A program made the position numbers and the translations under genes. DNA of 63,545 bases, the filler included, from Octopus bimaculoides (taxonomy: Eukaryota): NCBI RefSeq assembly GCF_001194135.2. It is 6 parts of 6 records of this genome, joined end to end, with 100 filler letters (N's around TTAATTAATTAA, not from the genome) between each part and the next. Parts side by side here need not be neighbours in the genome. Positions count along the whole stretch, not along the records: positions 40,752 to 52,616 come from NC_069006.1; 5 more parts are not named here. The stretch is one strand, 5' to 3'. A model generated the notes under the pieces. It was not told the origin of the DNA. It did no database searches and worked only from the letters and a program-made list of their open reading frames with translations. Of the stretch, positions 40,581-49,899 are shown piece after piece. Numbering within the stretch: position 1 is the first letter of the stretch; each line of letters begins with the position of its first letter.

Positions 40581-41026
40581 GTAAGTAGATTTAACGTTCA
40601 ATACTTAAATAGTGCCATACAATGAAAGAGAAATGTCGATAAAGAAATAGANNNNNNNNNNNNNNNNNNNNNNNNNNNNNNNNNNNNNNNNNNNNTTAAT
40701 TAATTAANNNNNNNNNNNNNNNNNNNNNNNNNNNNNNNNNNNNNNNNNNNNACACACACACACATATGCACAAATACCTAGATGATGTTGATAAAAGTTC
40801 CAATGAAGGAGCCTTGAATCTATGTTAGAGTCCGGCTCTTTCTCTATGGACAAGAAATACAGAAATGAAACTGATTGATAACATACATACATACATACAT
40901 ACATACATACATACATGCATATATACATACATACATACATACTTGATACATACATACATACATACATACATACATACATACATACATGCATGCATACATA
41001 CATACATACATACATACAAGCATACA

Positions 41027-41060
<34 letters not shown>

Positions 41061-41139
41061 CATACATACACTGAACCTGTGTTTGGAGAAGAACGTAAGT
41101 CCTTAATTCCTACGTTACAAATGGTCGCAATATCTAGGA

Positions 41140-41243
41140 TTATAAAAATCTGCAGACCTGCTTAGGATTTAACCATTTGTGTCCTGAACACCTCAACTTT
41201 ATCTCACCATATACTTGGTTTCCTGATGCACTCTACCGGTAGA
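41140..41243 (-). pseudogene. MIB2-like: Decayed MIB-like exon (second half of REP repeat 2)
   Basis: STGRV, then a 1-nt frameshift, then QVYGEIKLRCSGHKWLNPKQV, versus recalled MIB2 ALGRVGKVVKVFGDGNLRVAVAGQRWTFSPSCL. Polypyrimidine tract upstream but no AG at the expected position. Confidence 0.5.
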
Positions 41244-41538
41244 GAGAAAAAATATGCCATCCACCGGTAAACCGGTGTTACGGTCTCAAAGGGTCAAAGG
41301 ATGACGGTTAAATCATGATGCTTCCTTTCACACACTTGTTAACAAGTTGGTGGACAGTTAAAAGGAGAAAGAGACCCACAAACATACACATATATAAACA
41401 CCCACACCAATGTATATATATATATATATATATATATATNNNNNNNNNNATATATAATTATATAGATATAATTATATATCTTGCATACATACATACATAC
41501 AGACAGGCAGACATACATACACACATACACACATACAT

Positions 41539-41595
<57 letters not shown>

Positions 41596-42589
41596 CGTGT
41601 GTGTGTGTGTGTGTGTATTTGTTTGTTTTGTATCTTTTATATCTGAATTGTCTCAGTTGTTTGACTGCAGTCATGCTGGGGCACCATCTTAGGTGGCTTT
41701 TATCGAATGAATCGGCCCCATTACTTTTCTAAGTCATGTACTTATTTTATCGATCACTTAACCCGAACCACAACATAAGGGAAACGTAAACGCACCAGCA
41801 CCGATTGTCAAACGATGGTGGTGCGACAATAAACAGACGCAAAAACACACACACAACGATACATATGTATGTATGTATGTATGCATGCATGTATGTATGT
41901 ATGTATGTATGTATGTATGTATGTATGCATACATGTATGTAAGAATATATGGATCTTTTCGGTTTGGCTGTCAGCATTTCAAAAATTAAAGTTTACCGAA
42001 AATTTAAAAAATTGACACAGTAATACACTTGGCCAAACTGAATTGCTGGAATTATTTCATTTTTTCCAGAAAAATGTTTTTAAAACGTTATAGAGGTTTA
42101 AAGTTTGATCATTTTCACCCAGTCAAGAAACAGGATTTGTAAGCTGTCATTTTGTGCTTGACAGCACATTTTGTCTCAATATCCTGAAAATAGTACGTGT
42201 GGCCAATATTTGCAAACAACACGTGTTATGCCTCCGGTCATTTTGTTTCATGTAAATTAATCTTATTTTGCTGTTATTTTAGCACAAGTCACAACCACCT
42301 CAGTGCTCAATGACAACCCCCCCCCCCAAACATTTAAGCATTCAATATGCATTTAATGCAAATGCAATAAACAACACGTTATATGCGATAAATATATTAC
42401 AATTCCTAACAGAAAAATTTGGAAGAATTAGATGAAAGTTCTCCAGTAATTTTCTTTCATGTAAATAAATGTTTACGTTAATCTTAAAAAATGTTCATCA
42501 TATAAAATGTCCATGTTCCAAAAGATGTACATATTATATGTAATAAATGAAATTAAGAGTAAATAAAATATGCCTAAAAAACAAACATT

Positions 42590-42840
42590 TAAGCAAGCAA
42601 TGCAGATCCGGTGACACATTTGACGAAATAATAGACCACATTGTCTTAAGATGTCCTGTGTTGAGGCCAAATGGATACAAAAATCGCTGCAGTAGGGCAG
42701 GACAGTATTTACATTGGAAAATATGTAAACACTACAAAATCAGCCCTCCTGCTTACTGGTATGAACATCATCCTGAGCCAGTCGTTAAAGGTAAGAATGT
42801 CACTGTCCTCTGAGATTTTCCACTAAACACCGACAATACC
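42590..42840 (+). mobile_element. Dong/R4-type LINE fragment (CCHC region)
   Basis: CRSGDTFDEIIDHIVLRCPVL...GQYLHWKICKHY...WYEHHPEPVV..KNVTVL*DF. Confidence 0.8.
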
Positions 42841-42864
42841 GCTAATAATAATAAGAATAAACAC

Positions 42865-43090
42865 ACAGGTAGTAGTAATAGTGAACACAGGGTCAGTTGT
42901 AACCGTCGAAGAGGAAGAAAATGCCCTTTGAATAAGTCATGTCTCGAAAAGAACATAATATATGAATGTGTAGTCGTAACCCATAATAAAACATACTATA
43001 ACATAGGATGTTCACAACCACGTTGAAGCTTCGCTATTACAATCACATCTCATCATTCAAGCACTAAAATACGGAAAGCACGATATCGCT
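42865..43090 (+). mobile_element. Penelope-like GIY-YIG fragment
   Basis: SCNRRRGRKCPLNKSCLEKNIIYECVV..NKTYYNIG, matching the CNCR..CPL..CL..NIIY..V..YIG pattern. Confidence 0.7.
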
Positions 43091-43125
43091 TAGCAAGCTA
43101 ATATGGCAACTATTATCTCACCTAA

Positions 43126-43166
<41 letters not shown>

Positions 43167-43225
43167 CGACGTGTTTGTATATACATGTATATATAAGTGT
43201 GTGTGGTAAGGGGAAAGAAATTAGA

Positions 43226-43420
43226 TATCCTCATTCTGGAAACCTCGCCCGAATGATTGCAACAGAGTGGATTCCGTGTAAGGCCCCACACCAGACAGCA
43301 TCTTGTTGTATGGCGCATAATTACGCAAGATAAATACCCAATAATGTGAACGATCCAGTCAAGTATCCAGGCATCGCCTGTCTCCTCAACATCATAAATA
43401 GAAGAAAAGTGCCCAAGAAG
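43226..43420 (-). pseudogene. MIB2-like: Decayed MIB-like exon (end of REP repeat 1 and start of repeat 2)
   Basis: Open frame LLGHFSSIYDVEETGDAWILDWIVH...CCNHSGEVSRM aligns without gaps to recalled MIB2 FIGQTGTVHRITDRGDVRV and has the HxGxxxRM signature. The acceptor reads CAA instead of CAG and no GT donor follows. Confidence 0.5.
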
Positions 43421-43554
43421 TTGCAGCGTTGATCAAAATGAATGAACCCGAAACAAACAGAATCTTGAAGCGAACCTCCGTAAAATACGACCATATTTAC
43501 AGCCAGGTCAGTATTATAGTTTTCAATGATCATTAAGCAAAATAATATACTATA

Positions 43555-43900
43555 ATAATACTCCATGTGTATTTCTCTGTCACAACATATGAATGAGAAA
43601 GGAAGGAGTGATAGTTAAGGAAGGAAGGGGTGAAAAAATCAAAGAGCGTTTCAACTCTGTGTGAAAATATGTGTGTATGTAAAAAGGGAGGTATGTGAAT
43701 GTTTGTGTGCTTGTGTGTGTGTGTGTGCAATGGAAGTGGATGGTGGTATAATAATACTAATACTCTTGTGTCTTTCTTCGTCGCAATATATGAATGAGAA
43801 AGGAAGATGATAGGGGAATAAGAAAGGAAGGGGTGAAAAAGAAACATCAAACAGCGTTTCAACTCAGTGTGAGTATATGTGTGTATGTGTGCGTGTGTAC
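43555..43900. repeat. Local tandem duplication of an approximately 200-bp unit
   Basis: atatgaatgagaaaggaag...aaggaaggggtgaaaaa..atcaaa.agcgtttcaactc.gtgtg occurs at 43588 and 43787. Confidence 0.75.
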
Positions 43901-44189
43901 AGGGAAGTATATGATTGTTTGTATGTGTAAGTTAGCGTTCTTTCAGTAACAAACAATGATCGTTCAACTACCAGATAACATTGACAAATGTATTAATTTG
44001 ATTTACCATCCATATTTTATCTGTGTTTTTTTAAATGATTATTACAATCACACACACACCTACCCAAACATACACATATACAAACTCATTAGAGAAAATA
44101 CTTATTCCCTGAATGTATCAAGAATATAAAACAACTGCAGTTGAAAGGTATATTATAAATACACATCTTCATCTAACAATTTATACATG

Positions 44190-44860
44190 TCTTAATTTGT
44201 AGAACAAGTAAAAAGATAAATTTTATTCAACGAATAGATACTGAACAGAATATATATAAAGGATAAAATCCTTTTTTTTTTTTTCTTTTTAAAGCAGAAA
44301 AATTTGTCAGCAGCCAGCCATGAGGATCGAACTCACATCTCTCCATCCGGTTGGAATGTTTTACCATTTAAGCTAAACTGCCTGACCCCCGAATTCTTTT
44401 GCAATTTAAGAAGTTATAGAATTATCCAGGAAAAACATTATCCAAGAAAGAAAAAAACAGGATTTTATCCTTTATATGTATACTGTTCAGTATCTATGCC
44501 TTGAATGAAATTTATTTTTCTACTTGTTCTACTATACATTTCAGCGCTTCGAAAACAAACTTGTTTGTTTACATACGGCGTAACCTATACGACATCTAGC
44601 GTTCCTAGATGATTCTATAACTTCTTAGTTTGCAGAAGATTTCGGCGGTCAGGCTGTTTAGCTTAAATGGTAAAGCATTCCAACCGGATATTGGAGAGAT
44701 GTGAGTTCGATCCTCATGGCTGGCTGCCCCCACATTTTTCTGCTTTTATATATATTCTGTTCAGTATTTATGCGTTGAATAAAATTTATTTGTCTGCTTG
44801 TTCTACAATATATTTCAACGCTTCTAAAATAAATTTGTTTGTTTAAATATGTCTTAATTT
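44190..44860. mobile_element. Inverted pair of tRNA-headed repeat units (same family as 3204-3630)
   Basis: gtcaggc.gtttagcttaaatggtaaa.cattccaaccggat..ggagagatgtgagttcgatcctcatggctggctgc is on - at 44305-44390 and on + at 44644-44728, with shared flanks. Confidence 0.8.
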
Positions 44861-45054
44861 ATTTATATTAAAAAATTTTACCTAGAGTTTTTTCACAAAA
44901 AAAATTTAGCTAATAAAAGCGTTATTAAACTAAAAACTTCATTTTGCACCTTATTTATTTATAAAATATTACAATTAGCCGTCATTTTTGACGGCAAGGA
45001 ACCAGCTAGTTATAATAATAATAATAATAAAGAAAAGGAGAAGATAGTACTTAC

Positions 45055-45207
45055 ACCTGGCATACGGCGATCCCAGCCTCCATGACCGTATTGGTTGTTC
45101 TTCAACGTTTGCTCATCAACATGTGTGCATACCTTATCCCCTACATTTATCTGCACACAACTATCAGAACAACCAGACATTGTAACTTGTTTTACCTGGA
45201 AATTCAC
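45055..45207 (-). CDS. MIB2-like: Mind bomb (MIB1/MIB2 family) REP/SH3-like repeat exon, well preserved
   Basis: tttcAG acceptor and GTAAGT donor, 153 nt, phase 0-0. VQINVGDKVCTHVDEQTLKNNQYGHGGWDRRMPG versus recalled MIB2 PFQHGDKVKCLLDTDVLREMQEGHGGWNPRMAE (GDKV..L..Q.GHGGW..RM). Confidence 0.8.
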
Positions 45208-45559
45208 CTGAAACAAGAACAGCGATCTATTGTATCAAATCCATAATAACAAAGTGTATATTAGTGGTTCAAAGATACATAGATATATACAAACTTAACC
45301 GTCAACCCACTTTAATTCATCACAAGATTACACAAGTGTTGAAATGATGATTTAAAGTGGTTAGACGATTTAGCGTCTCTTTTCGGTATATAGGTAAGAT
45401 TTTTCTATGCCCTTCATTATAATTGTATGTATGATTTTACCTAAATTGGTCTATTTTTGTATGCTGGCCACTGATGAAATTTTTAATATTATCCTTTTTC
45501 TTTTATTCTTTTATTTGTTTTAATCATTTGACTATGTCCATGCTGGAGTACCGCCTTTG

Positions 45560-45700
45560 GTCGAACAAATCGACCCCAGGACTTATTCTTTGTAAGCTTA
45601 GTACTTATTATATTGGACTCTTTTGCCAAACCGCTAGGTTACGGGGACGTAAACACACCAGCATCGGTTGTCAAGCGATGGTGGGGGACAAACACAGACA
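45560..45700 (+). mobile_element. SINE 3' portion
   Basis: tcgaccccag.acttattctttgtaagc.tagtacttatt...ccgctaggttacggggacgtaaacacaccagcatcggttgtcaagcgatggtggggg followed by (CA)n. Similar tails at about 47500, 57560, 59400 and 60880. Confidence 0.75.
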
Positions 45701-45927
45701 CACAAACATACACACACACCCACACACACATATACATACATACATACATACATGCATACATATNNNNNNNNNNNNNNNNNNNNNNNNNNNNNNNNNNNNN
45801 NNNNNNNNNNNNNNNNNNNNNNNNNNNNNNNNNNNNNNNNNNNNNNNNNNNNNNNNNNNNNNNNNNNNNNNNNNNNNNNNNNNNNNNNNNNNNNNNNNNN
45901 NNNNNNNNNNNNNNNNNNNNNNNNNNN

Positions 45928-45960
<33 letters not shown>

Positions 45961-45961
<1 letters not shown>

Positions 45962-46112
45962 TACAGGCTTCTTTCAATTTCCGTGTGCCAAATCCACTCA
46001 CAAGGCTTTGGTCGGCCCGAGGTTATAGTAGAAGGCACTTGCTCAAGGTGCCATGCAGTGAGACTGATCCCGGAACCATGTGGTTCGTAAGCAAGCTACT
46101 TACCACACAGCC
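45961..46112 (-). mobile_element. tRNA-derived SINE (CORE-like family)
   Basis: Closely similar to 29030-29125 and extends to the ggctgtgtggtaagtagcttgc head. Confidence 0.8.
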
Positions 46113-46741
46113 ATTCCTGCGCCTCAAAAAAATGATGAACATCCTTAATCGATTATCGAACCTCATTGGGTTTTCATCAGAAACGTGTAAATTATGCTGA
46201 CAATTTTCATTATTATAATTTGGATAATTCACATTCACTTCGAGACAGTCTGGTTACTTATAGGCTGTTCTGACCGAGCGCATATGTGTTGAGGTAGGCT
46301 ACGAGATAGCTATAACTTAATACGATTTCGCTTATATTCGATGCTGGTGTTTGTAATAATAAGCTTGTGATGTTTCATCCCTGCTATTAGTCTATTGATT
46401 CACAGGCAGAGTTTAGGTTTTTGACGCTGTTGACAACGTCTGATAGCTTGATACTGTCCAGGTGTGGAAACAATAGTGATATCCTTTAGGAAGTTGATGA
46501 TAAACATATANNNNNNNNNNTGTGTGTGTGTGTGTGTGTGTGATTGTAAATATTTTATATCTTAGAGTATCGTTACTTTTTGTTGTCCTTCACTCTCGCA
46601 GAGTTGAACGCATTTTGGGATTTATGGTCTATGGTGATTACATATATTGATATTGATTATCTTCAGGAATAGTCTCAGACTAGGAAAACGAGACACATTT
46701 GCATCGTTGGATGTTCCTGAACCAGTTGTTATGTATCTCAC

Positions 46742-46857
46742 CTGATGGCCACTACTTTGAAGAAAGAGAAAGAGACAGTTAAACCAATTTGCTCATCGTA
46801 CCCACATTACACCTGGCATACCATTCTTGCAATTTCTGTGACTCGGAAAACTATACG
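46742..46857 (-). other. Candidate 5' exon of the MIB-like locus
   Basis: gattttacAG acceptor, with alternative donors at 46810 (GGT|GTAATG) or 46741 (CAG|GTGAGA). Confidence 0.35.
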
Positions 46858-47164
46858 CTGTAAAATCAAGCAATTTCTTTAGAAATACAAGGAAATGAAT
46901 TACTTCTTAAATTGGAATTACCTCATCATCAATACTTTGCATACACATCCGGAGATGAGGTTACTTTTCCATCACCTTTTTTCTGTCAAGTCTGACCCTT
47001 GAAGAAAACGTCCTATCTAATATTTACTTCCTTTTTCGTTGAACCTATCAACAACTTTCGCTCCTGATGCTTCTTTTCATTTTTCTTTTCAATAATTAAA
47101 ACATATCAAACGTGAACTAGAAGCAAAAGAAATATAAGGAGAAATAAAGGAATAAACAAGTTAC

Positions 47165-47440
47165 CTTAATGCGAGAGATAGAGAAATGTGCTTTGGTGAC
47201 TGGAAACGTTGGTTCTCGTCAGGACTGGACTTTGGCTCAGGTACAGCAATGACTGTCTCTAAACGTTGTGTCAGAATGTGTTTACCTCTCTTCGCTTATC
47301 GACTTATATGTGTTTCTTAGGAATGAGGAAGAATAGTAGTAAGAGAAGATCGAACAGAGAAGGAGGTGTTGAGAGAAGATCGTATTATGTTTTGTTGTTT
47401 ATTGTTCTCGTGGGTGTTGTTTTGTTGCAGATTTTGTGTC
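47165..47440 (-). other. Candidate first (5' UTR) exon of the MIB-like locus
   Basis: Non-repetitive sequence ending in AAG|GTAACT on the - strand. The 5' boundary is a guess. Confidence 0.25.
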
Positions 47441-47565
47441 ATCCTCAATTAGATACGCTAAATATCCATTACAGTCGAGCAAATCTTTGTATGCCTAATA
47501 GTTATTCTATCAGTCTCTTTTGCCGCCGAACTGTCACGTTGCGGGGACATAAATACACCAACATA

Positions 47566-47606
<41 letters not shown>

Positions 47607-48279
47607 GCATACATACATACATGTACGTGCACAGGCATTCACTTAGCTGAATGTCCGTGTAAGCTTTGAATGCAAGCTATAGAATTCATTAATCAAAGGA
47701 CATATTCATTCAACAGTTTTATTCTCCTGTGACCTAAAATATTAAAAATTACTACCATAACCATGACTAGTTTCTAAATCACATTGGGAAATCTTCTTGT
47801 TTGCACAAAAGTTGTTAATATTAAAAGCAAGAAACTACGTAAAATAAGAAATGGTACCAGTCATAAATATGCTGGATGGAATGGACTAATCATAAAAATT
47901 CTTAAATTCGTTCCTAAATAAGAAATCATTGCCACCAAACAATTTTGTTAAGAGTTGGGTGAACATCGTGCAAATGGCTCATGTGAACGGAATTAATCTA
48001 AACATCTCAAGATCGAGGGTAGATGAAGAGGAGAGGACATATGCTCTAGAAGTCAGGGAGATCGTGGATTTTGTGGGATTTCCACTAGCAATCCTTCGAA
48101 GTCTCCCTGTTTGGGGATACTAATTGTTATAAATCTTATGGTGATTCTGTTTTTACGCGCATCAATCCCCTTCTTTTTGTATCGTATCGTCCTTTGCTAT
48201 CCCCAATCTTTGATATGAAGCCTCAGAGGTCGATAAGGAAAAAATTATTATTATTATTGTTACCTTATTGATGCACTAC

Positions 48280-48850
48280 AGATTGAATTGTTGGAAAGGA
48301 AACAATTCCTACGTTGAGCTACAGCAAGTAACCTTAGATGTGTAGAAGTTTTTTAAGCATCCGAAATGTCCCTAATCACACTATTTACTGGAGCTGCACT
48401 GAACTAGGTTTTATGCTTATTTCTTCTGTCCATCTGTTCAATGGCCACTTCACTTTTTTTGCTACATATCCCATATTGACTTTCTCACTATTTAGGAAGG
48501 TAAATCCAACTACTTTGTATTTTCTATTCTCTTTGTTTACTGCAATTAACTCTAGTTTCTATCACTCTATCAGTTTGAATGTTAAAATCCCACAATATCT
48601 TATATTTCTTACCTTCTAACTCTTTACTAGGTTCATGTCCATACCATCAATCAATATGGTTAAATTTCGCTTTCTACATAACTCCCAGCGGATTGTTCTT
48701 CCTAGGTTATCATGTCTTGTATTCTTTCTGTGCCAGAATCCTACATTCACTTACTAAATAACTAACAGTTACCAATTTTGATTTACATAGCCTATATTCG
48801 GAATCTACATGGCTTTGTCTATTTTGGATTTGGTAACGATAACATAGTAC
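48280..48850 (-). mobile_element. Dong/R4-type LINE 3' fragment
   Basis: Similar to 15190-15660 (ctggagctgcact.aa.t.gttttatg...tttagga.gtaaatccaactac...gttaaaatcccacaatatctt). Confidence 0.65.
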
Positions 48851-49109
48851 GTTTGTTATCGTTACTTAGATAAATTAACCAGCACATTAGGGAGCTGGTT
48901 AGGTCTTCTCCATCTGCAACCATTAGGTGGTCAGACACTCCTCATTTTTTTGCTGAAAAAAGATGGTGAACGAGACGTGATCGTCCATTGAAAGGGACAG
49001 ATGGTCATCCGTAAACGAGAACAGCCAAGACAGTGTCAGTTATAGCAACAGCAGCAACAACAACATCAAGATGGACAAGAATTATAGCGCAAGTGAAGTC
49101 TACAAAATT

Positions 49110-49500
49110 TTCTTTTGCTTTTAGTACCACTTTCACCATTGCAGACAACGAAAGAAATATTCATCCACATCTACCTCGGTCGAAGATTGTTCAGATTTAG
49201 AATACTCAACAAACCACGAGAAATAAACATCTGTTGGTTGGTGGCTGCGCTTCTCTTGGATTTAGAAAAGAAAACCACAGTTTTAGAAGGGATTTAGAAG
49301 CGAAAACCACAGGGGATGCAGCTACAAATACAAACAAACAAGTAAGGTATCGAGGTTATCCAGGGCATTATAAAGCCCACCAAAAGGAACAGGTTTCTTG
49401 GCTGTTGGAGGCAGAAAGCGAAGCTGTTATCTGTGCAGGGACACAGACCACCTCAAAGCCTTCTGACCACAACAAAATAGATAAGTAAGTCAACAGTTTT
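49110..49500 (+). mobile_element. Dong/R4-like LINE fragment
   Basis: SWLLEAESEAVICAGTQT (about G.L..ETE..I.AAQ.Q) and HPHLPRSKIVQI*NT (HP.....RLY..R-like). Confidence 0.45.
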
Positions 49501-49899
49501 GCTGAAATCACAACCAGCAGAAAAATAACAACGGCATCAGTAAAACAGGCGATTGCTACAGTGTCAAAAGCAACAGTAACTGCAGTAGAAGCAACTTTAA
49601 TCACAATAGCAATGGCTGCAGTACCTGCAAGAACAAGCACAATATGGGACGCAAGTGCACAAAACACATCAGTAAACTCACCAAGATCAACAGCAGCAAA
49701 AGACCAAAAAATCTAGCAACAAAGAAATTATAGTTATACAACACTATCAAAACAAAATATCCAGAAGGAATAGGGGCTTTCCAGAGAGATATATGTGAAA
49801 GTATATACAAAGAGCTGCTCATGGAAATATCCACACATACCGATGGGGAAGGAACGTCCATGGCCTCAGTCAGAGAAGGTAGCATAAATGCACATGACC

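What the first reader, a model, noticed from the sequence alone, without database searches (positions are those of the whole stretch)
41140..47440. Hidden Mind bomb (MIB2-like) paralog that starts at the REP domain and decays 3'-ward
Seen: an intact phase 0-0 exon (45207-45055) encoding GDKV..L..Q.GHGGW..RM. At 43420 on the same strand is a 63-codon open frame with the expected continuation (LLGHFSSIYDVEETGDAWI against FIGQTGTVHRITDRGDVRV, same spacing; later HSGEVSRM). At 41243 is the next expected piece (GRV...VYGEIKLR..SGHKW.LNP) with a 1-nt frameshift. Order and strand match MIB architecture, but both downstream acceptors lack AG. Established: MIB1/2 are Notch-ligand E3 ligases with Mib-Herc2/ZZ/Mib-Herc2, then REP, ankyrin and RING domains. 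Inference: this copy lacks the N-terminal module, because the exon's 5' part (VNFQVKQVTMSGCSDSC) is not Mib-Herc2 and offers its own Met. It is either an unprocessed pseudogene or a short REP-only protein, which could act as a ligand-binding decoy without ligase activity. None of this is visible in the ORF track as a named gene. The MIB2 comparison is from memory.
Basis: partly seen in the sequence, partly recalled or inferred. Interest (0 to 1): 0.72.

Follow-up and report, generated by a model that had tools for sequence, protein, structure and literature searches.

The report
Octopus single Mind-bomb-repeat mini-gene exon
The exon is real, but it is the first coding exon of an already catalogued 84-residue octopus protein made of one Mind bomb repeat; the "decaying" downstream pieces are chance matches, and its true second exon lies outside this piece.

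Summary
The minus-strand exon 45207-45055 is real. It has an AG acceptor and a GTAAGT donor, and it passes Pfam's own threshold for the Mind bomb SH3 repeat (SH3_15).

It is not hidden. Codons 45180-45055 are identical to residues 1-42 of UniProt A0A0L8FXJ4, an 84-residue Octopus bimaculoides protein. That protein is one complete Mib repeat and nothing else. Residues 43-84 are not encoded anywhere in the piece, so exon 2 lies beyond the edge at 40752.

No Mib-Herc2, ZZ, ankyrin or RING exon is present in the piece.

Octopus vulgaris and Argonauta hians carry 81-residue, repeat-only genes that are about 40% identical to this one. They have the same two coding exons and the same phase-0 intron position. 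Between those two species the gene is under strong purifying selection (dN/dS about 0.03).

The "short REP-only protein" alternative is therefore supported. The "3'-ward decay" reading is not. A role as a ligase-less binder or competitor for Mind bomb substrates is inference only.

The parts
45055..45207 (-). Exon of 153 nt. It comprises a probable 5' UTR part (45207-45181) and the first coding part (45180-45055, 42 codons), which encodes the first half of one Mib repeat (SH3_15).
   Evidence: Pfam SH3_15 at 26.1 bits, above the gathering score of 24. My own repeat profile gives E=1.5e-10. The translation is identical to P0001 residues 1-42.
45178..45180 (-). ATG start codon, in the context ACAATGT.
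   Evidence: It is the start of the UniProt model P0001. The 81-residue genes of O. vulgaris and A. hians have their Met at the equivalent position, and A. hians has an in-frame TGA four codons upstream of it.
45208..45209 (-). Splice acceptor AG after a pyrimidine tract (ttcttgtttcag|GTGAATTT). It probably joins an unlocated 5' UTR exon.
   Evidence: Read from the sequence. The same motif ttccag|GTGAATTT lies upstream of the O. vulgaris paralogue's ATG, at 17 nt rather than 27 nt, so the frame between acceptor and ATG is not conserved.
45049..45054 (-). Splice donor gtaagt, phase 0, directly after codon 42 (GGT, Gly).
   Evidence: Read from the sequence. The donor position after RM-x-x is the same in L001 and L002.
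40752..45054 (-). Intron, at least 4.3 kb, running off the edge of the piece. It is filled with interspersed repeats and microsatellites.
   Evidence: P0001 residues 43-84 have no match anywhere in the piece; the best tblastn E-value is 5.8. Both pieces score at background. A tRNA-like repeat pair is present.

Best explanation
Window 45207-45055 (minus strand) is the first coding exon of a two-coding-exon gene already catalogued as UniProt A0A0L8FXJ4 (Octopus bimaculoides, 84 residues).

Shown:
- The protein is one complete Mib repeat, an SH3-like barrel, with about 10 residues before it and about 5 after.
- It has no MZM module, no second repeat, no ankyrin repeats and no RING.
- Translation starts at the ATG at 45180. 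The 27 nt between the acceptor and the ATG are most likely 5' UTR.
- The intron follows codon 42 in phase 0. Exon 2 lies outside the piece.
- The gene is a divergent paralogue (about 40% identity) of a conserved 81-residue, repeat-only gene in octopods.

Inferred origin: a DNA-level partial duplication of repeat 1 of a MIB2-like gene, because the intron within the repeat is retained.

Inferred mechanism: in MIB1 the repeat module binds the C-box of Notch-ligand tails. A free repeat with no ligase part would bind such short motifs without ubiquitinating them. It would then act as a competitor or adaptor. The 81-residue paralogues start MGxxxS/T, a myristoylation-type N-terminus, so they may sit at membranes. 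This 84-residue copy starts MSGCSDSC and lacks that motif.
For: Identity of the exon:
- Pfam SH3_15 passes its threshold on the exon alone.
- Residues 1-42 of P0001 are identical to the window translation. P0001 is UniRef100_A0A0L8FXJ4.

The whole protein is one repeat:
- Full P0001 scores 59 bits against SH3_15, covering profile positions 2-66 of 67.
- It matches the MIB1 REP structure 4tse by sequence at E=4.7e-14, better to repeat 1 (31.2 bits) than to repeat 2 (22.6 bits).
- The AlphaFold model has mean pLDDT 84.7. It superposes on 4tse and 4xi7 with TM-score 0.76 and rmsd 1.3-1.4 A.

No other MIB-family exon in the piece.

Relatives:
- 81-residue repeat-only proteins occur in O. vulgaris (P0173) and A. 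hians (P0086).
- They have the same two exons and the same intron position and phase.
- No other MIB-type exon lies within 10 kb on either side of them.
- Between the two species 67 of 81 residues are identical, while synonymous sites are saturated (pS 0.74; dN 0.091; dN/dS about 0.03) and the introns do not align.
- A. hians has an in-frame TGA four codons before the ATG.

Background: the REP module binds the C-box, and REP has MZM-independent activity in vivo (PMC11887331).
Against: - Exon 2 could not be seen, because it lies outside the piece. The two-exon model therefore rests on the database entry.
- P0001 is a singleton. No protein more than 50% identical was found among 1.84 billion representatives, and word-based searches returned only P0001 itself. 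No orthologue is available to test selection on this copy.
- No gene with exactly this product is on record in the assemblies index.
- The intron is more than 4.3 kb, against 0.9 and 2.2 kb in the relatives.
- The frame between the acceptor and the ATG happens to be open, so an N-terminal extension is not excluded by sequence alone.
- No expression data were available, and the function is entirely inferred.
Confidence: 0.72

Rival explanations
1. This is an unprocessed MIB2-like pseudogene whose later exons survive as degenerate remnants at 43420-43233 and 41243-41140.
For: Joining 43420 to the exon raises the Pfam score from 26.1 to 32.8 bits. One MIB-family protein aligns to 41208-41146 over 21 residues at E=0.71.
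Against: - Each piece alone gives no SH3_15 hit and scores at background against the repeat profile (-0.4 and 1.4 bits).
- The 7.5-bit gain at 43420 is matched or beaten at four other loci, including plus-strand and upstream ones, while the real second half adds 43.7 bits.
- In the relatives the whole second half is one exon.
- An intact second half exists in the catalogued protein.
Confidence: 0.04
2. Exon 1 is intact, but the locus is a dead or dying young duplicate, or the 84-residue model is an annotation artefact. For example, exon 1 of this copy might be joined to exon 2 of a neighbouring copy after this copy's own exon 2 was lost to repeat insertions.
For: - P0001 is a singleton, listed by UniRef and MetaClust only, with no close relative in any octopod protein set searched.
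- It is not in the gene-position index.
- The intron is unusually long and repeat-filled compared with the relatives.
- The myristoylation-type N-terminus of the conserved paralogues is absent.
Against: - There is no stop or frameshift in the 42 codons seen, and both splice sites are consensus.
- The full model is a complete, high-scoring repeat (59 bits) that folds confidently.
- The family it belongs to is demonstrably under selection.
Confidence: 0.18
3. The exon is an internal exon of a larger MIB-like gene whose upstream coding exons lie outside the piece or in gaps. The Met would then be internal.
For: There is a good AG acceptor, and the 9 codons between the acceptor and the Met are open in frame.
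Against: - No MIB-family exon was found in the 7.4 kb upstream within the piece.
- The equivalent acceptor in O. vulgaris lies 17 nt from the ATG, against 27 nt here, so the frame is not conserved. A. hians has an in-frame stop there.
- No MIB exon lies within 10 kb on either side of either relative.
- The upstream gap at 45764-45927 lies inside an interspersed repeat.
Confidence: 0.06

Closest known systems
MIB1/MIB2 (Mind bomb) E3 ubiquitin ligases; REP module solved as PDB 4TSE and 4XI6/4XI7
   Same: The protein is one Mib repeat (Pfam SH3_15). It is 31-33% identical to MIB1 REP, the predicted fold superposes at 1.3-1.4 A, and repeat 1 is the better match. The nearest single-domain relatives in the representative library include MIB-type proteins (Mib-Herc2 and repeats, some with ZZ, ankyrin or RING).
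   Different: It has one repeat instead of two. It has no Mib-Herc2/ZZ/Mib-Herc2 module, no ankyrin repeats and no RING, so it cannot be a ligase.
81-residue 'hypothetical predicted protein' of Octopus vulgaris (P0173) and Argonauta hians (P0086, GAB1602226.1)
   Same: Single repeat only. The Met lies about 10 residues before the domain and the stop comes just after it. There are two coding exons, with a phase-0 intron after RM-x-x and a gtaagt donor.
   Different: Identity is only about 40%, so this is a paralogue and not the orthologue. This copy is 84 rather than 81 residues, starts MSGCSDSC rather than MGLxxS, and has an intron of more than 4.3 kb against 0.9 and 2.2 kb.
Unnamed 81-residue single-repeat ORF on a marine metagenome contig (P0145, ERZ976238)
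   Same: Stand-alone single SH3_15 protein of the same length, about 46% identical over the domain.
   Different: It is an uninterrupted ORF on a 987-base contig of unknown organism. Nothing links it to cephalopods.

Membership tests
Pfam SH3_15 (PF18346), Mind bomb SH3 repeat domain | Score above the curated gathering threshold of 24 bits | tested here: met
   The exon alone scores 26.1 bits at E=1.1e-5. Full P0001 scores 59 bits over profile positions 2-66 of 67.
Pfam SH3_15 (PF18346), Mind bomb SH3 repeat domain | Fold of the solved Mib repeat (PDB 4TSE) | tested here: met
   The model has pLDDT 84.7. Foldseek top hits are 4tse, 4xi7 and 4xi6, with TM-score 0.76-0.77 and rmsd 1.3-1.4 A. The model needs exon 2, which was taken from the database protein and not from the window.
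Mind bomb E3 ligases (MIB1/MIB2) | N-terminal Mib-Herc2 / ZZ / Mib-Herc2 (MZM) module | tested here: not met
   The module is absent from P0001. tblastn with 150 MIB-family representatives finds no such exon in the piece; the best hit elsewhere has E=0.019 and lies in a repeat. Exons beyond the piece cannot be seen.
Mind bomb E3 ligases (MIB1/MIB2) | Two tandem Mib repeats (REP) | tested here: not met
   P0001 has a single SH3_15 stretch. Only one fragment in the piece matches the repeat profile.
Mind bomb E3 ligases (MIB1/MIB2) | Ankyrin repeats and C-terminal RING finger(s) | tested here: not met
   Neither is present in P0001 or in the piece. P0001 ends 5 residues after the repeat.
Octopod repeat-only mini-proteins (provisional group: P0173, P0086/P0156, P0001) | Two coding exons split in phase 0 after RM-x-x within the repeat | tested here: met
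   The window donor follows ...RRMPG. The donors in L001 and L002 follow ...PRMED. Exon 2 of the window gene is not visible.
Octopod repeat-only mini-proteins (provisional group: P0173, P0086/P0156, P0001) | Translation starts at a Met just before the repeat, with no upstream coding exons | tested here: inconclusive
   A. hians has an in-frame TGA at codon -4. In O. vulgaris the acceptor-to-ATG distance differs from the window's by 10 nt. In the window the frame is open back to the acceptor, so sequence alone does not settle it.
Octopod repeat-only mini-proteins (provisional group: P0173, P0086/P0156, P0001) | N-terminal MGxxxS/T (myristoylation-type consensus; the rule is from general knowledge) | tested here: not met
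   P0173 starts MGLSIS and P0086 starts MGLGTS. P0001 starts MSGCSD.
Octopod repeat-only mini-proteins (provisional group: P0173, P0086/P0156, P0001) | Purifying selection on the coding sequence | not testable with these tools
   Selection is shown for the 81-residue lineage (dN/dS about 0.03). No orthologue of the 84-residue copy was found.
Unprocessed pseudogene | Disabling lesions: frameshifts, stop codons or lost splice sites in recognisably homologous exons | tested here: not met
   The only homologous exon in the piece is intact, with consensus splice sites. The pieces said to carry the lesions are not homologous.

The most novel reading that the evidence does not exclude
Octopods carry a small, previously undescribed family of stand-alone single-Mib-repeat mini-proteins of 81-84 residues. 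The conserved members would be N-myristoylated. The family would have been carved out of a MIB2-like gene by partial duplication. Its members would act as ligase-less competitors or adaptors at Notch-ligand (or other MIB-substrate) tails. The window's gene would be a divergent, lineage-specific member that has lost the lipid anchor.
Probability: 0.15. Interest if true: 0.55.

Novelty: new variant of a known kind. Interest (0 to 1): 0.3.

Why it matters
For the scan, this corrects a finding. The exon is genuine but already catalogued, and the story of a hidden paralogue decaying 3'-ward rests on chance matches.

One by-product is modestly interesting. A protein consisting of a single Mib repeat is conserved between Octopus and Argonauta under strong purifying selection. 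No paper in the searched library describes it.

In flies, the repeat module of Mib1 shows deleterious, dominant-negative-type activity when separated from the MZM module (PMC11887331). A natural free repeat is therefore a plausible endogenous modulator of Mind bomb substrates, and it would be easy to test by binding and Notch-reporter assays.

Tried and rejected
- Locating exon 2 of P0001 in the piece by tblastn with word size 2 and E up to 1000 found nothing better than E=5.8.
- Looking up the genomic contig of P0001 failed; it is not on record.
- Word-indexed homologue searches with the exon and with P0001 returned only P0001 itself.
- The top hits of the exhaustive representative search were multi-repeat proteins of algae, amphioxus and a jellyfish. 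They rank high only because scores sum over many repeats, so I rejected them as close relatives.
- Synteny between the window and the O. vulgaris or A. hians loci by blastn showed only shared interspersed repeats. The loci are therefore not orthologous.
- Weak ZZ-like tblastn hits at 50.4-50.9 kb (E=0.04-0.6) lie on both strands, some of them (from about 50.7 kb) inside a degenerate LINE remnant. I rejected them as noise.
- A 15-nt exact copy of the exon's end plus donor at 46821-46807 has no flanking similarity and no repeat-profile signal. I did not count it as a duplicated exon.
- Literature searches for stand-alone Mib-repeat proteins or cephalopod Mind bomb paralogues found nothing relevant.


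Full report
**1. Observation**

On the minus strand, 45207-45055 is a 153-nt open exon. It is preceded by ttcttgtttcag and followed by gtaagt. It translates to VNFQVKQVTMSGCSDSCVQINVGDKVCTHVDEQTLKNNQYGHGGWDRRMPG.

Pfam SH3_15 (Mind bomb SH3 repeat) matches residues 21-49 to profile positions 2-30 of 67, at E=1.1e-5 and 26.1 bits, above the curated threshold of 24. I built a repeat profile from 474 repeat instances in 150 library representatives. It scores the exon at 36.0 bits, E=1.5e-10, among 645 six-frame fragments of the piece.

**2. Assembly gaps**

None of the three gaps lies inside the exon or inside either downstream piece, so no claimed frame crosses a gap.

- 45764-45927 lies 557 nt upstream of the exon. 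Its flanks (45490-45714 and 45944-46107) align to directly adjacent stretches of one interspersed-repeat copy in an Octopus vulgaris locus (L001 12261-12487 and 12487-12650). The gap is an unresolved microsatellite within a repeat and its flanks are co-linear.
- 41440-41449 is flanked by (TA)n on both sides.
- 46511-46520 abuts (CA)n. I could not test these two further.

**3. The exon is not hidden**

A search of the 5.8-billion-protein collection returned one hit. It is an 84-residue Octopus bimaculoides protein (P0001, UniRef100_A0A0L8FXJ4, 'Mind bomb SH3 repeat domain-containing protein'), identical to the window translation from the Met onward.

tblastn places residues 1-42 at 45180-45055. 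Residues 43-84 (LIKKIGTVVGISDNGDVEVKFEKYDEIFTFNKASLVVVHIDD) have no match on either strand of the piece; the best E-value is 5.8. Exon 2 therefore lies beyond the edge of the piece at 40752. Much less likely, it lies in the (TA)n gap.

Full P0001 is one complete repeat:
- SH3_15 scores 59 bits over profile positions 2-66 of 67.
- It matches MIB1 REP (PDB 4tse) at E=4.7e-14, better to repeat 1 than to repeat 2.
- An AlphaFold model (mean pLDDT 84.7) has 4tse, 4xi7 and 4xi6 as its only strong structural matches, with TM-score 0.76 and rmsd 1.3-1.4 A.

**4. The downstream pieces**

The quoted strings exist, but the tests do not support homology.

- Alone, neither gives an SH3_15 hit at E<=10.
- Against the repeat profile, the 43432-43121 frame scores -0.4 bits (E=35) and the 41232-41143 frame scores 1.4 bits (E=9.6). 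Nine fragments, several on the plus strand, outrank the better one.
- With 150 MIB-family proteins as tblastn queries, every significant hit falls on the exon. The best hit to 41208-41146 has E=0.71 for one query.
- Concatenating 43420 to the exon did raise the Pfam score from 26.1 to 32.8 bits, so I measured a null. I joined every open stretch of at least 20 codons in the piece, on both strands, to the exon. That gave 8,861 join points outside the exon. The join at 43420 adds 7.5 bits. Four loci add more and one ties; they include plus-strand and upstream positions that cannot be continuations. The true second half adds 43.7 bits.
- In the relatives the whole second half is one exon.

The '3'-ward decay' is not supported.

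**5. No other Mind bomb parts**

No Mib-Herc2, ZZ, ankyrin or RING exon is detectable anywhere in 40752-52616. Weak ZZ-like hits at 50.4-50.9 kb lie on both strands, some of them (from about 50.7 kb) inside a degenerate LINE reverse-transcriptase remnant on the plus strand.

**6. Relatives**

An exhaustive HMMER search of 1.84 billion representatives found 190 proteins at E<=0.001. None is more than 48% identical. The top ranks are multi-repeat proteins of unrelated eukaryotes, which rank high because their repeat scores sum.

By single-domain score, the nearest include MIB-type proteins (with Mib-Herc2, and some with ZZ, ankyrin or RING) and an 81-residue Argonauta hians protein. A profile search added an 81-residue Octopus vulgaris protein. 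Both are repeat-only and about 40% identical to P0001.

Their loci (L001, L002) show two coding exons, with the intron in phase 0 after ...PRMED. That position is equivalent to ...RRMPG in the window, and the donor is the same gtaagt. No other MIB-family exon lies within 10 kb on either side of them.

Between the two species 67 of 81 residues are identical, although synonymous sites are saturated (pS 0.74), dN is 0.091 and the introns do not align. A stand-alone single-repeat gene is therefore real and under strong purifying selection in octopods. At 40% identity, and with no shared unique flanking DNA, the window's gene is a paralogue of it and not its orthologue.

**7. Start of the protein**

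The window has tttcag|GTGAATTT followed by 27 nt to the ATG. O. vulgaris has ttccag|GTGAATTT followed by 17 nt to its ATG. A. hians has an in-frame TGA four codons before its ATG.

The acceptor motif is shared, but the distance differs by 10 nt, which is not a multiple of three. The Met at 45180 would then be the start. In the window the frame happens to be open back to the acceptor, so this is an inference and not a proof.

**8. Mechanism (inferred)**

In MIB1 the MZM module binds the N-box and the REP module binds the C-box of Notch-ligand tails. In Drosophila, a Mib1 lacking MZM is deleterious in a REP-dependent way (PMC11887331).

A free repeat with no ankyrin or RING part cannot ubiquitinate. 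The most economical reading is a competitor or adaptor for the short motifs that Mind bomb repeats recognise. The conserved 81-residue proteins begin MGLSIS or MGLGTS, which fits the N-myristoylation consensus (my own knowledge of the rule). They may therefore be membrane-tethered. P0001 begins MSGCSDSC and lacks that motif. None of this was tested.

**9. Rivals**

- The locus may be a dying duplicate, or the 84-residue model may be a mis-join. P0001 is a singleton, no orthologue was found, it is not in the gene index, and the intron is long and repeat-filled. I give this 0.18.
- An internal exon of a larger gene: 0.06.

**10. Verdict**

The REP-only alternative holds; the 'hidden' and 'decays' claims do not. 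The gene is a catalogued but uncharacterised architecture variant of a known domain family. Interest is modest.

Noticed in passing
window 44197-44862: The intron holds a composite repeat. Two inverted tRNA-like units (arms 44291-44345 / 44692-44746 and 44345-44432 / 44602-44689, 90-93% complementary) sit among flanking direct and inverted repeats. ARAGORN calls one unit tRNA-Ser(gga) at 44651-44728 on the plus strand. It looks like a pair of tRNA-derived SINE insertions.
   Followed up: partly
window 45490-46124 (also 41628-41882 and 47486-47564): An interspersed repeat surrounds the 45764-45927 gap. It has many copies, 72-90% identical and in both orientations, within 21 kb of an unrelated Octopus vulgaris locus (L001), and one copy in Argonauta (L002). 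It carries an internal microsatellite, which is where the gap sits.
   Followed up: partly
window about 50700-52200, plus strand: A degenerate LINE reverse-transcriptase remnant with frameshifts. Pfam RVT_1 matches at E=1.3e-5 and 25.4 bits (below the threshold of 29.6) for 51339-51548, and RT-like motifs such as LRPINLLNAEHKILAKVLAKR and YADD are readable in the translation. Long antisense ORFs on the minus strand at about 50.1-51.1 kb overlap it in part and have no family match.
   Followed up: partly
window 46807-46821, minus strand: An exact 15-nt copy (GTATGCCAGGTGTAA) of the exon's last 9 nt plus its donor lies 1.6 kb upstream on the same strand. About 0.003-0.007 such matches are expected by chance. 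There is no flanking similarity and no repeat-profile signal. It could be chance, a relic, or the donor of a leader exon.
   Followed up: partly
L001 10001-11139 (O. vulgaris) and L002 10001-12424 (A. hians): The conserved 81-residue repeat-only proteins start MGLSIS or MGLGTS, a myristoylation-type N-terminus. A. hians has two near-identical copies (P0086 and P0156, one residue apart) on the same 18-Mb contig. The A. hians gene lies next to a cytochrome P450 gene.
   Followed up: no
L003 170-415 (marine metagenome contig, ERZ976238): An uninterrupted 81-residue ORF that is a single Mib repeat, about 46% identical to P0001 over the domain. The organism is unknown. Stand-alone repeats may therefore not be confined to octopods.
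   Followed up: partly
window 42547-42813, plus strand: An 88-residue ORF (…CRSGDTFDEIIDHIVLRCPVLRPNGYKNRCSRAGQYLHWKICKHY…WYEHHPEPVV…). From memory it resembles the C-terminal tail of invertebrate LINE ORF2 proteins. It has no Pfam match at E<=0.1.
   Followed up: no
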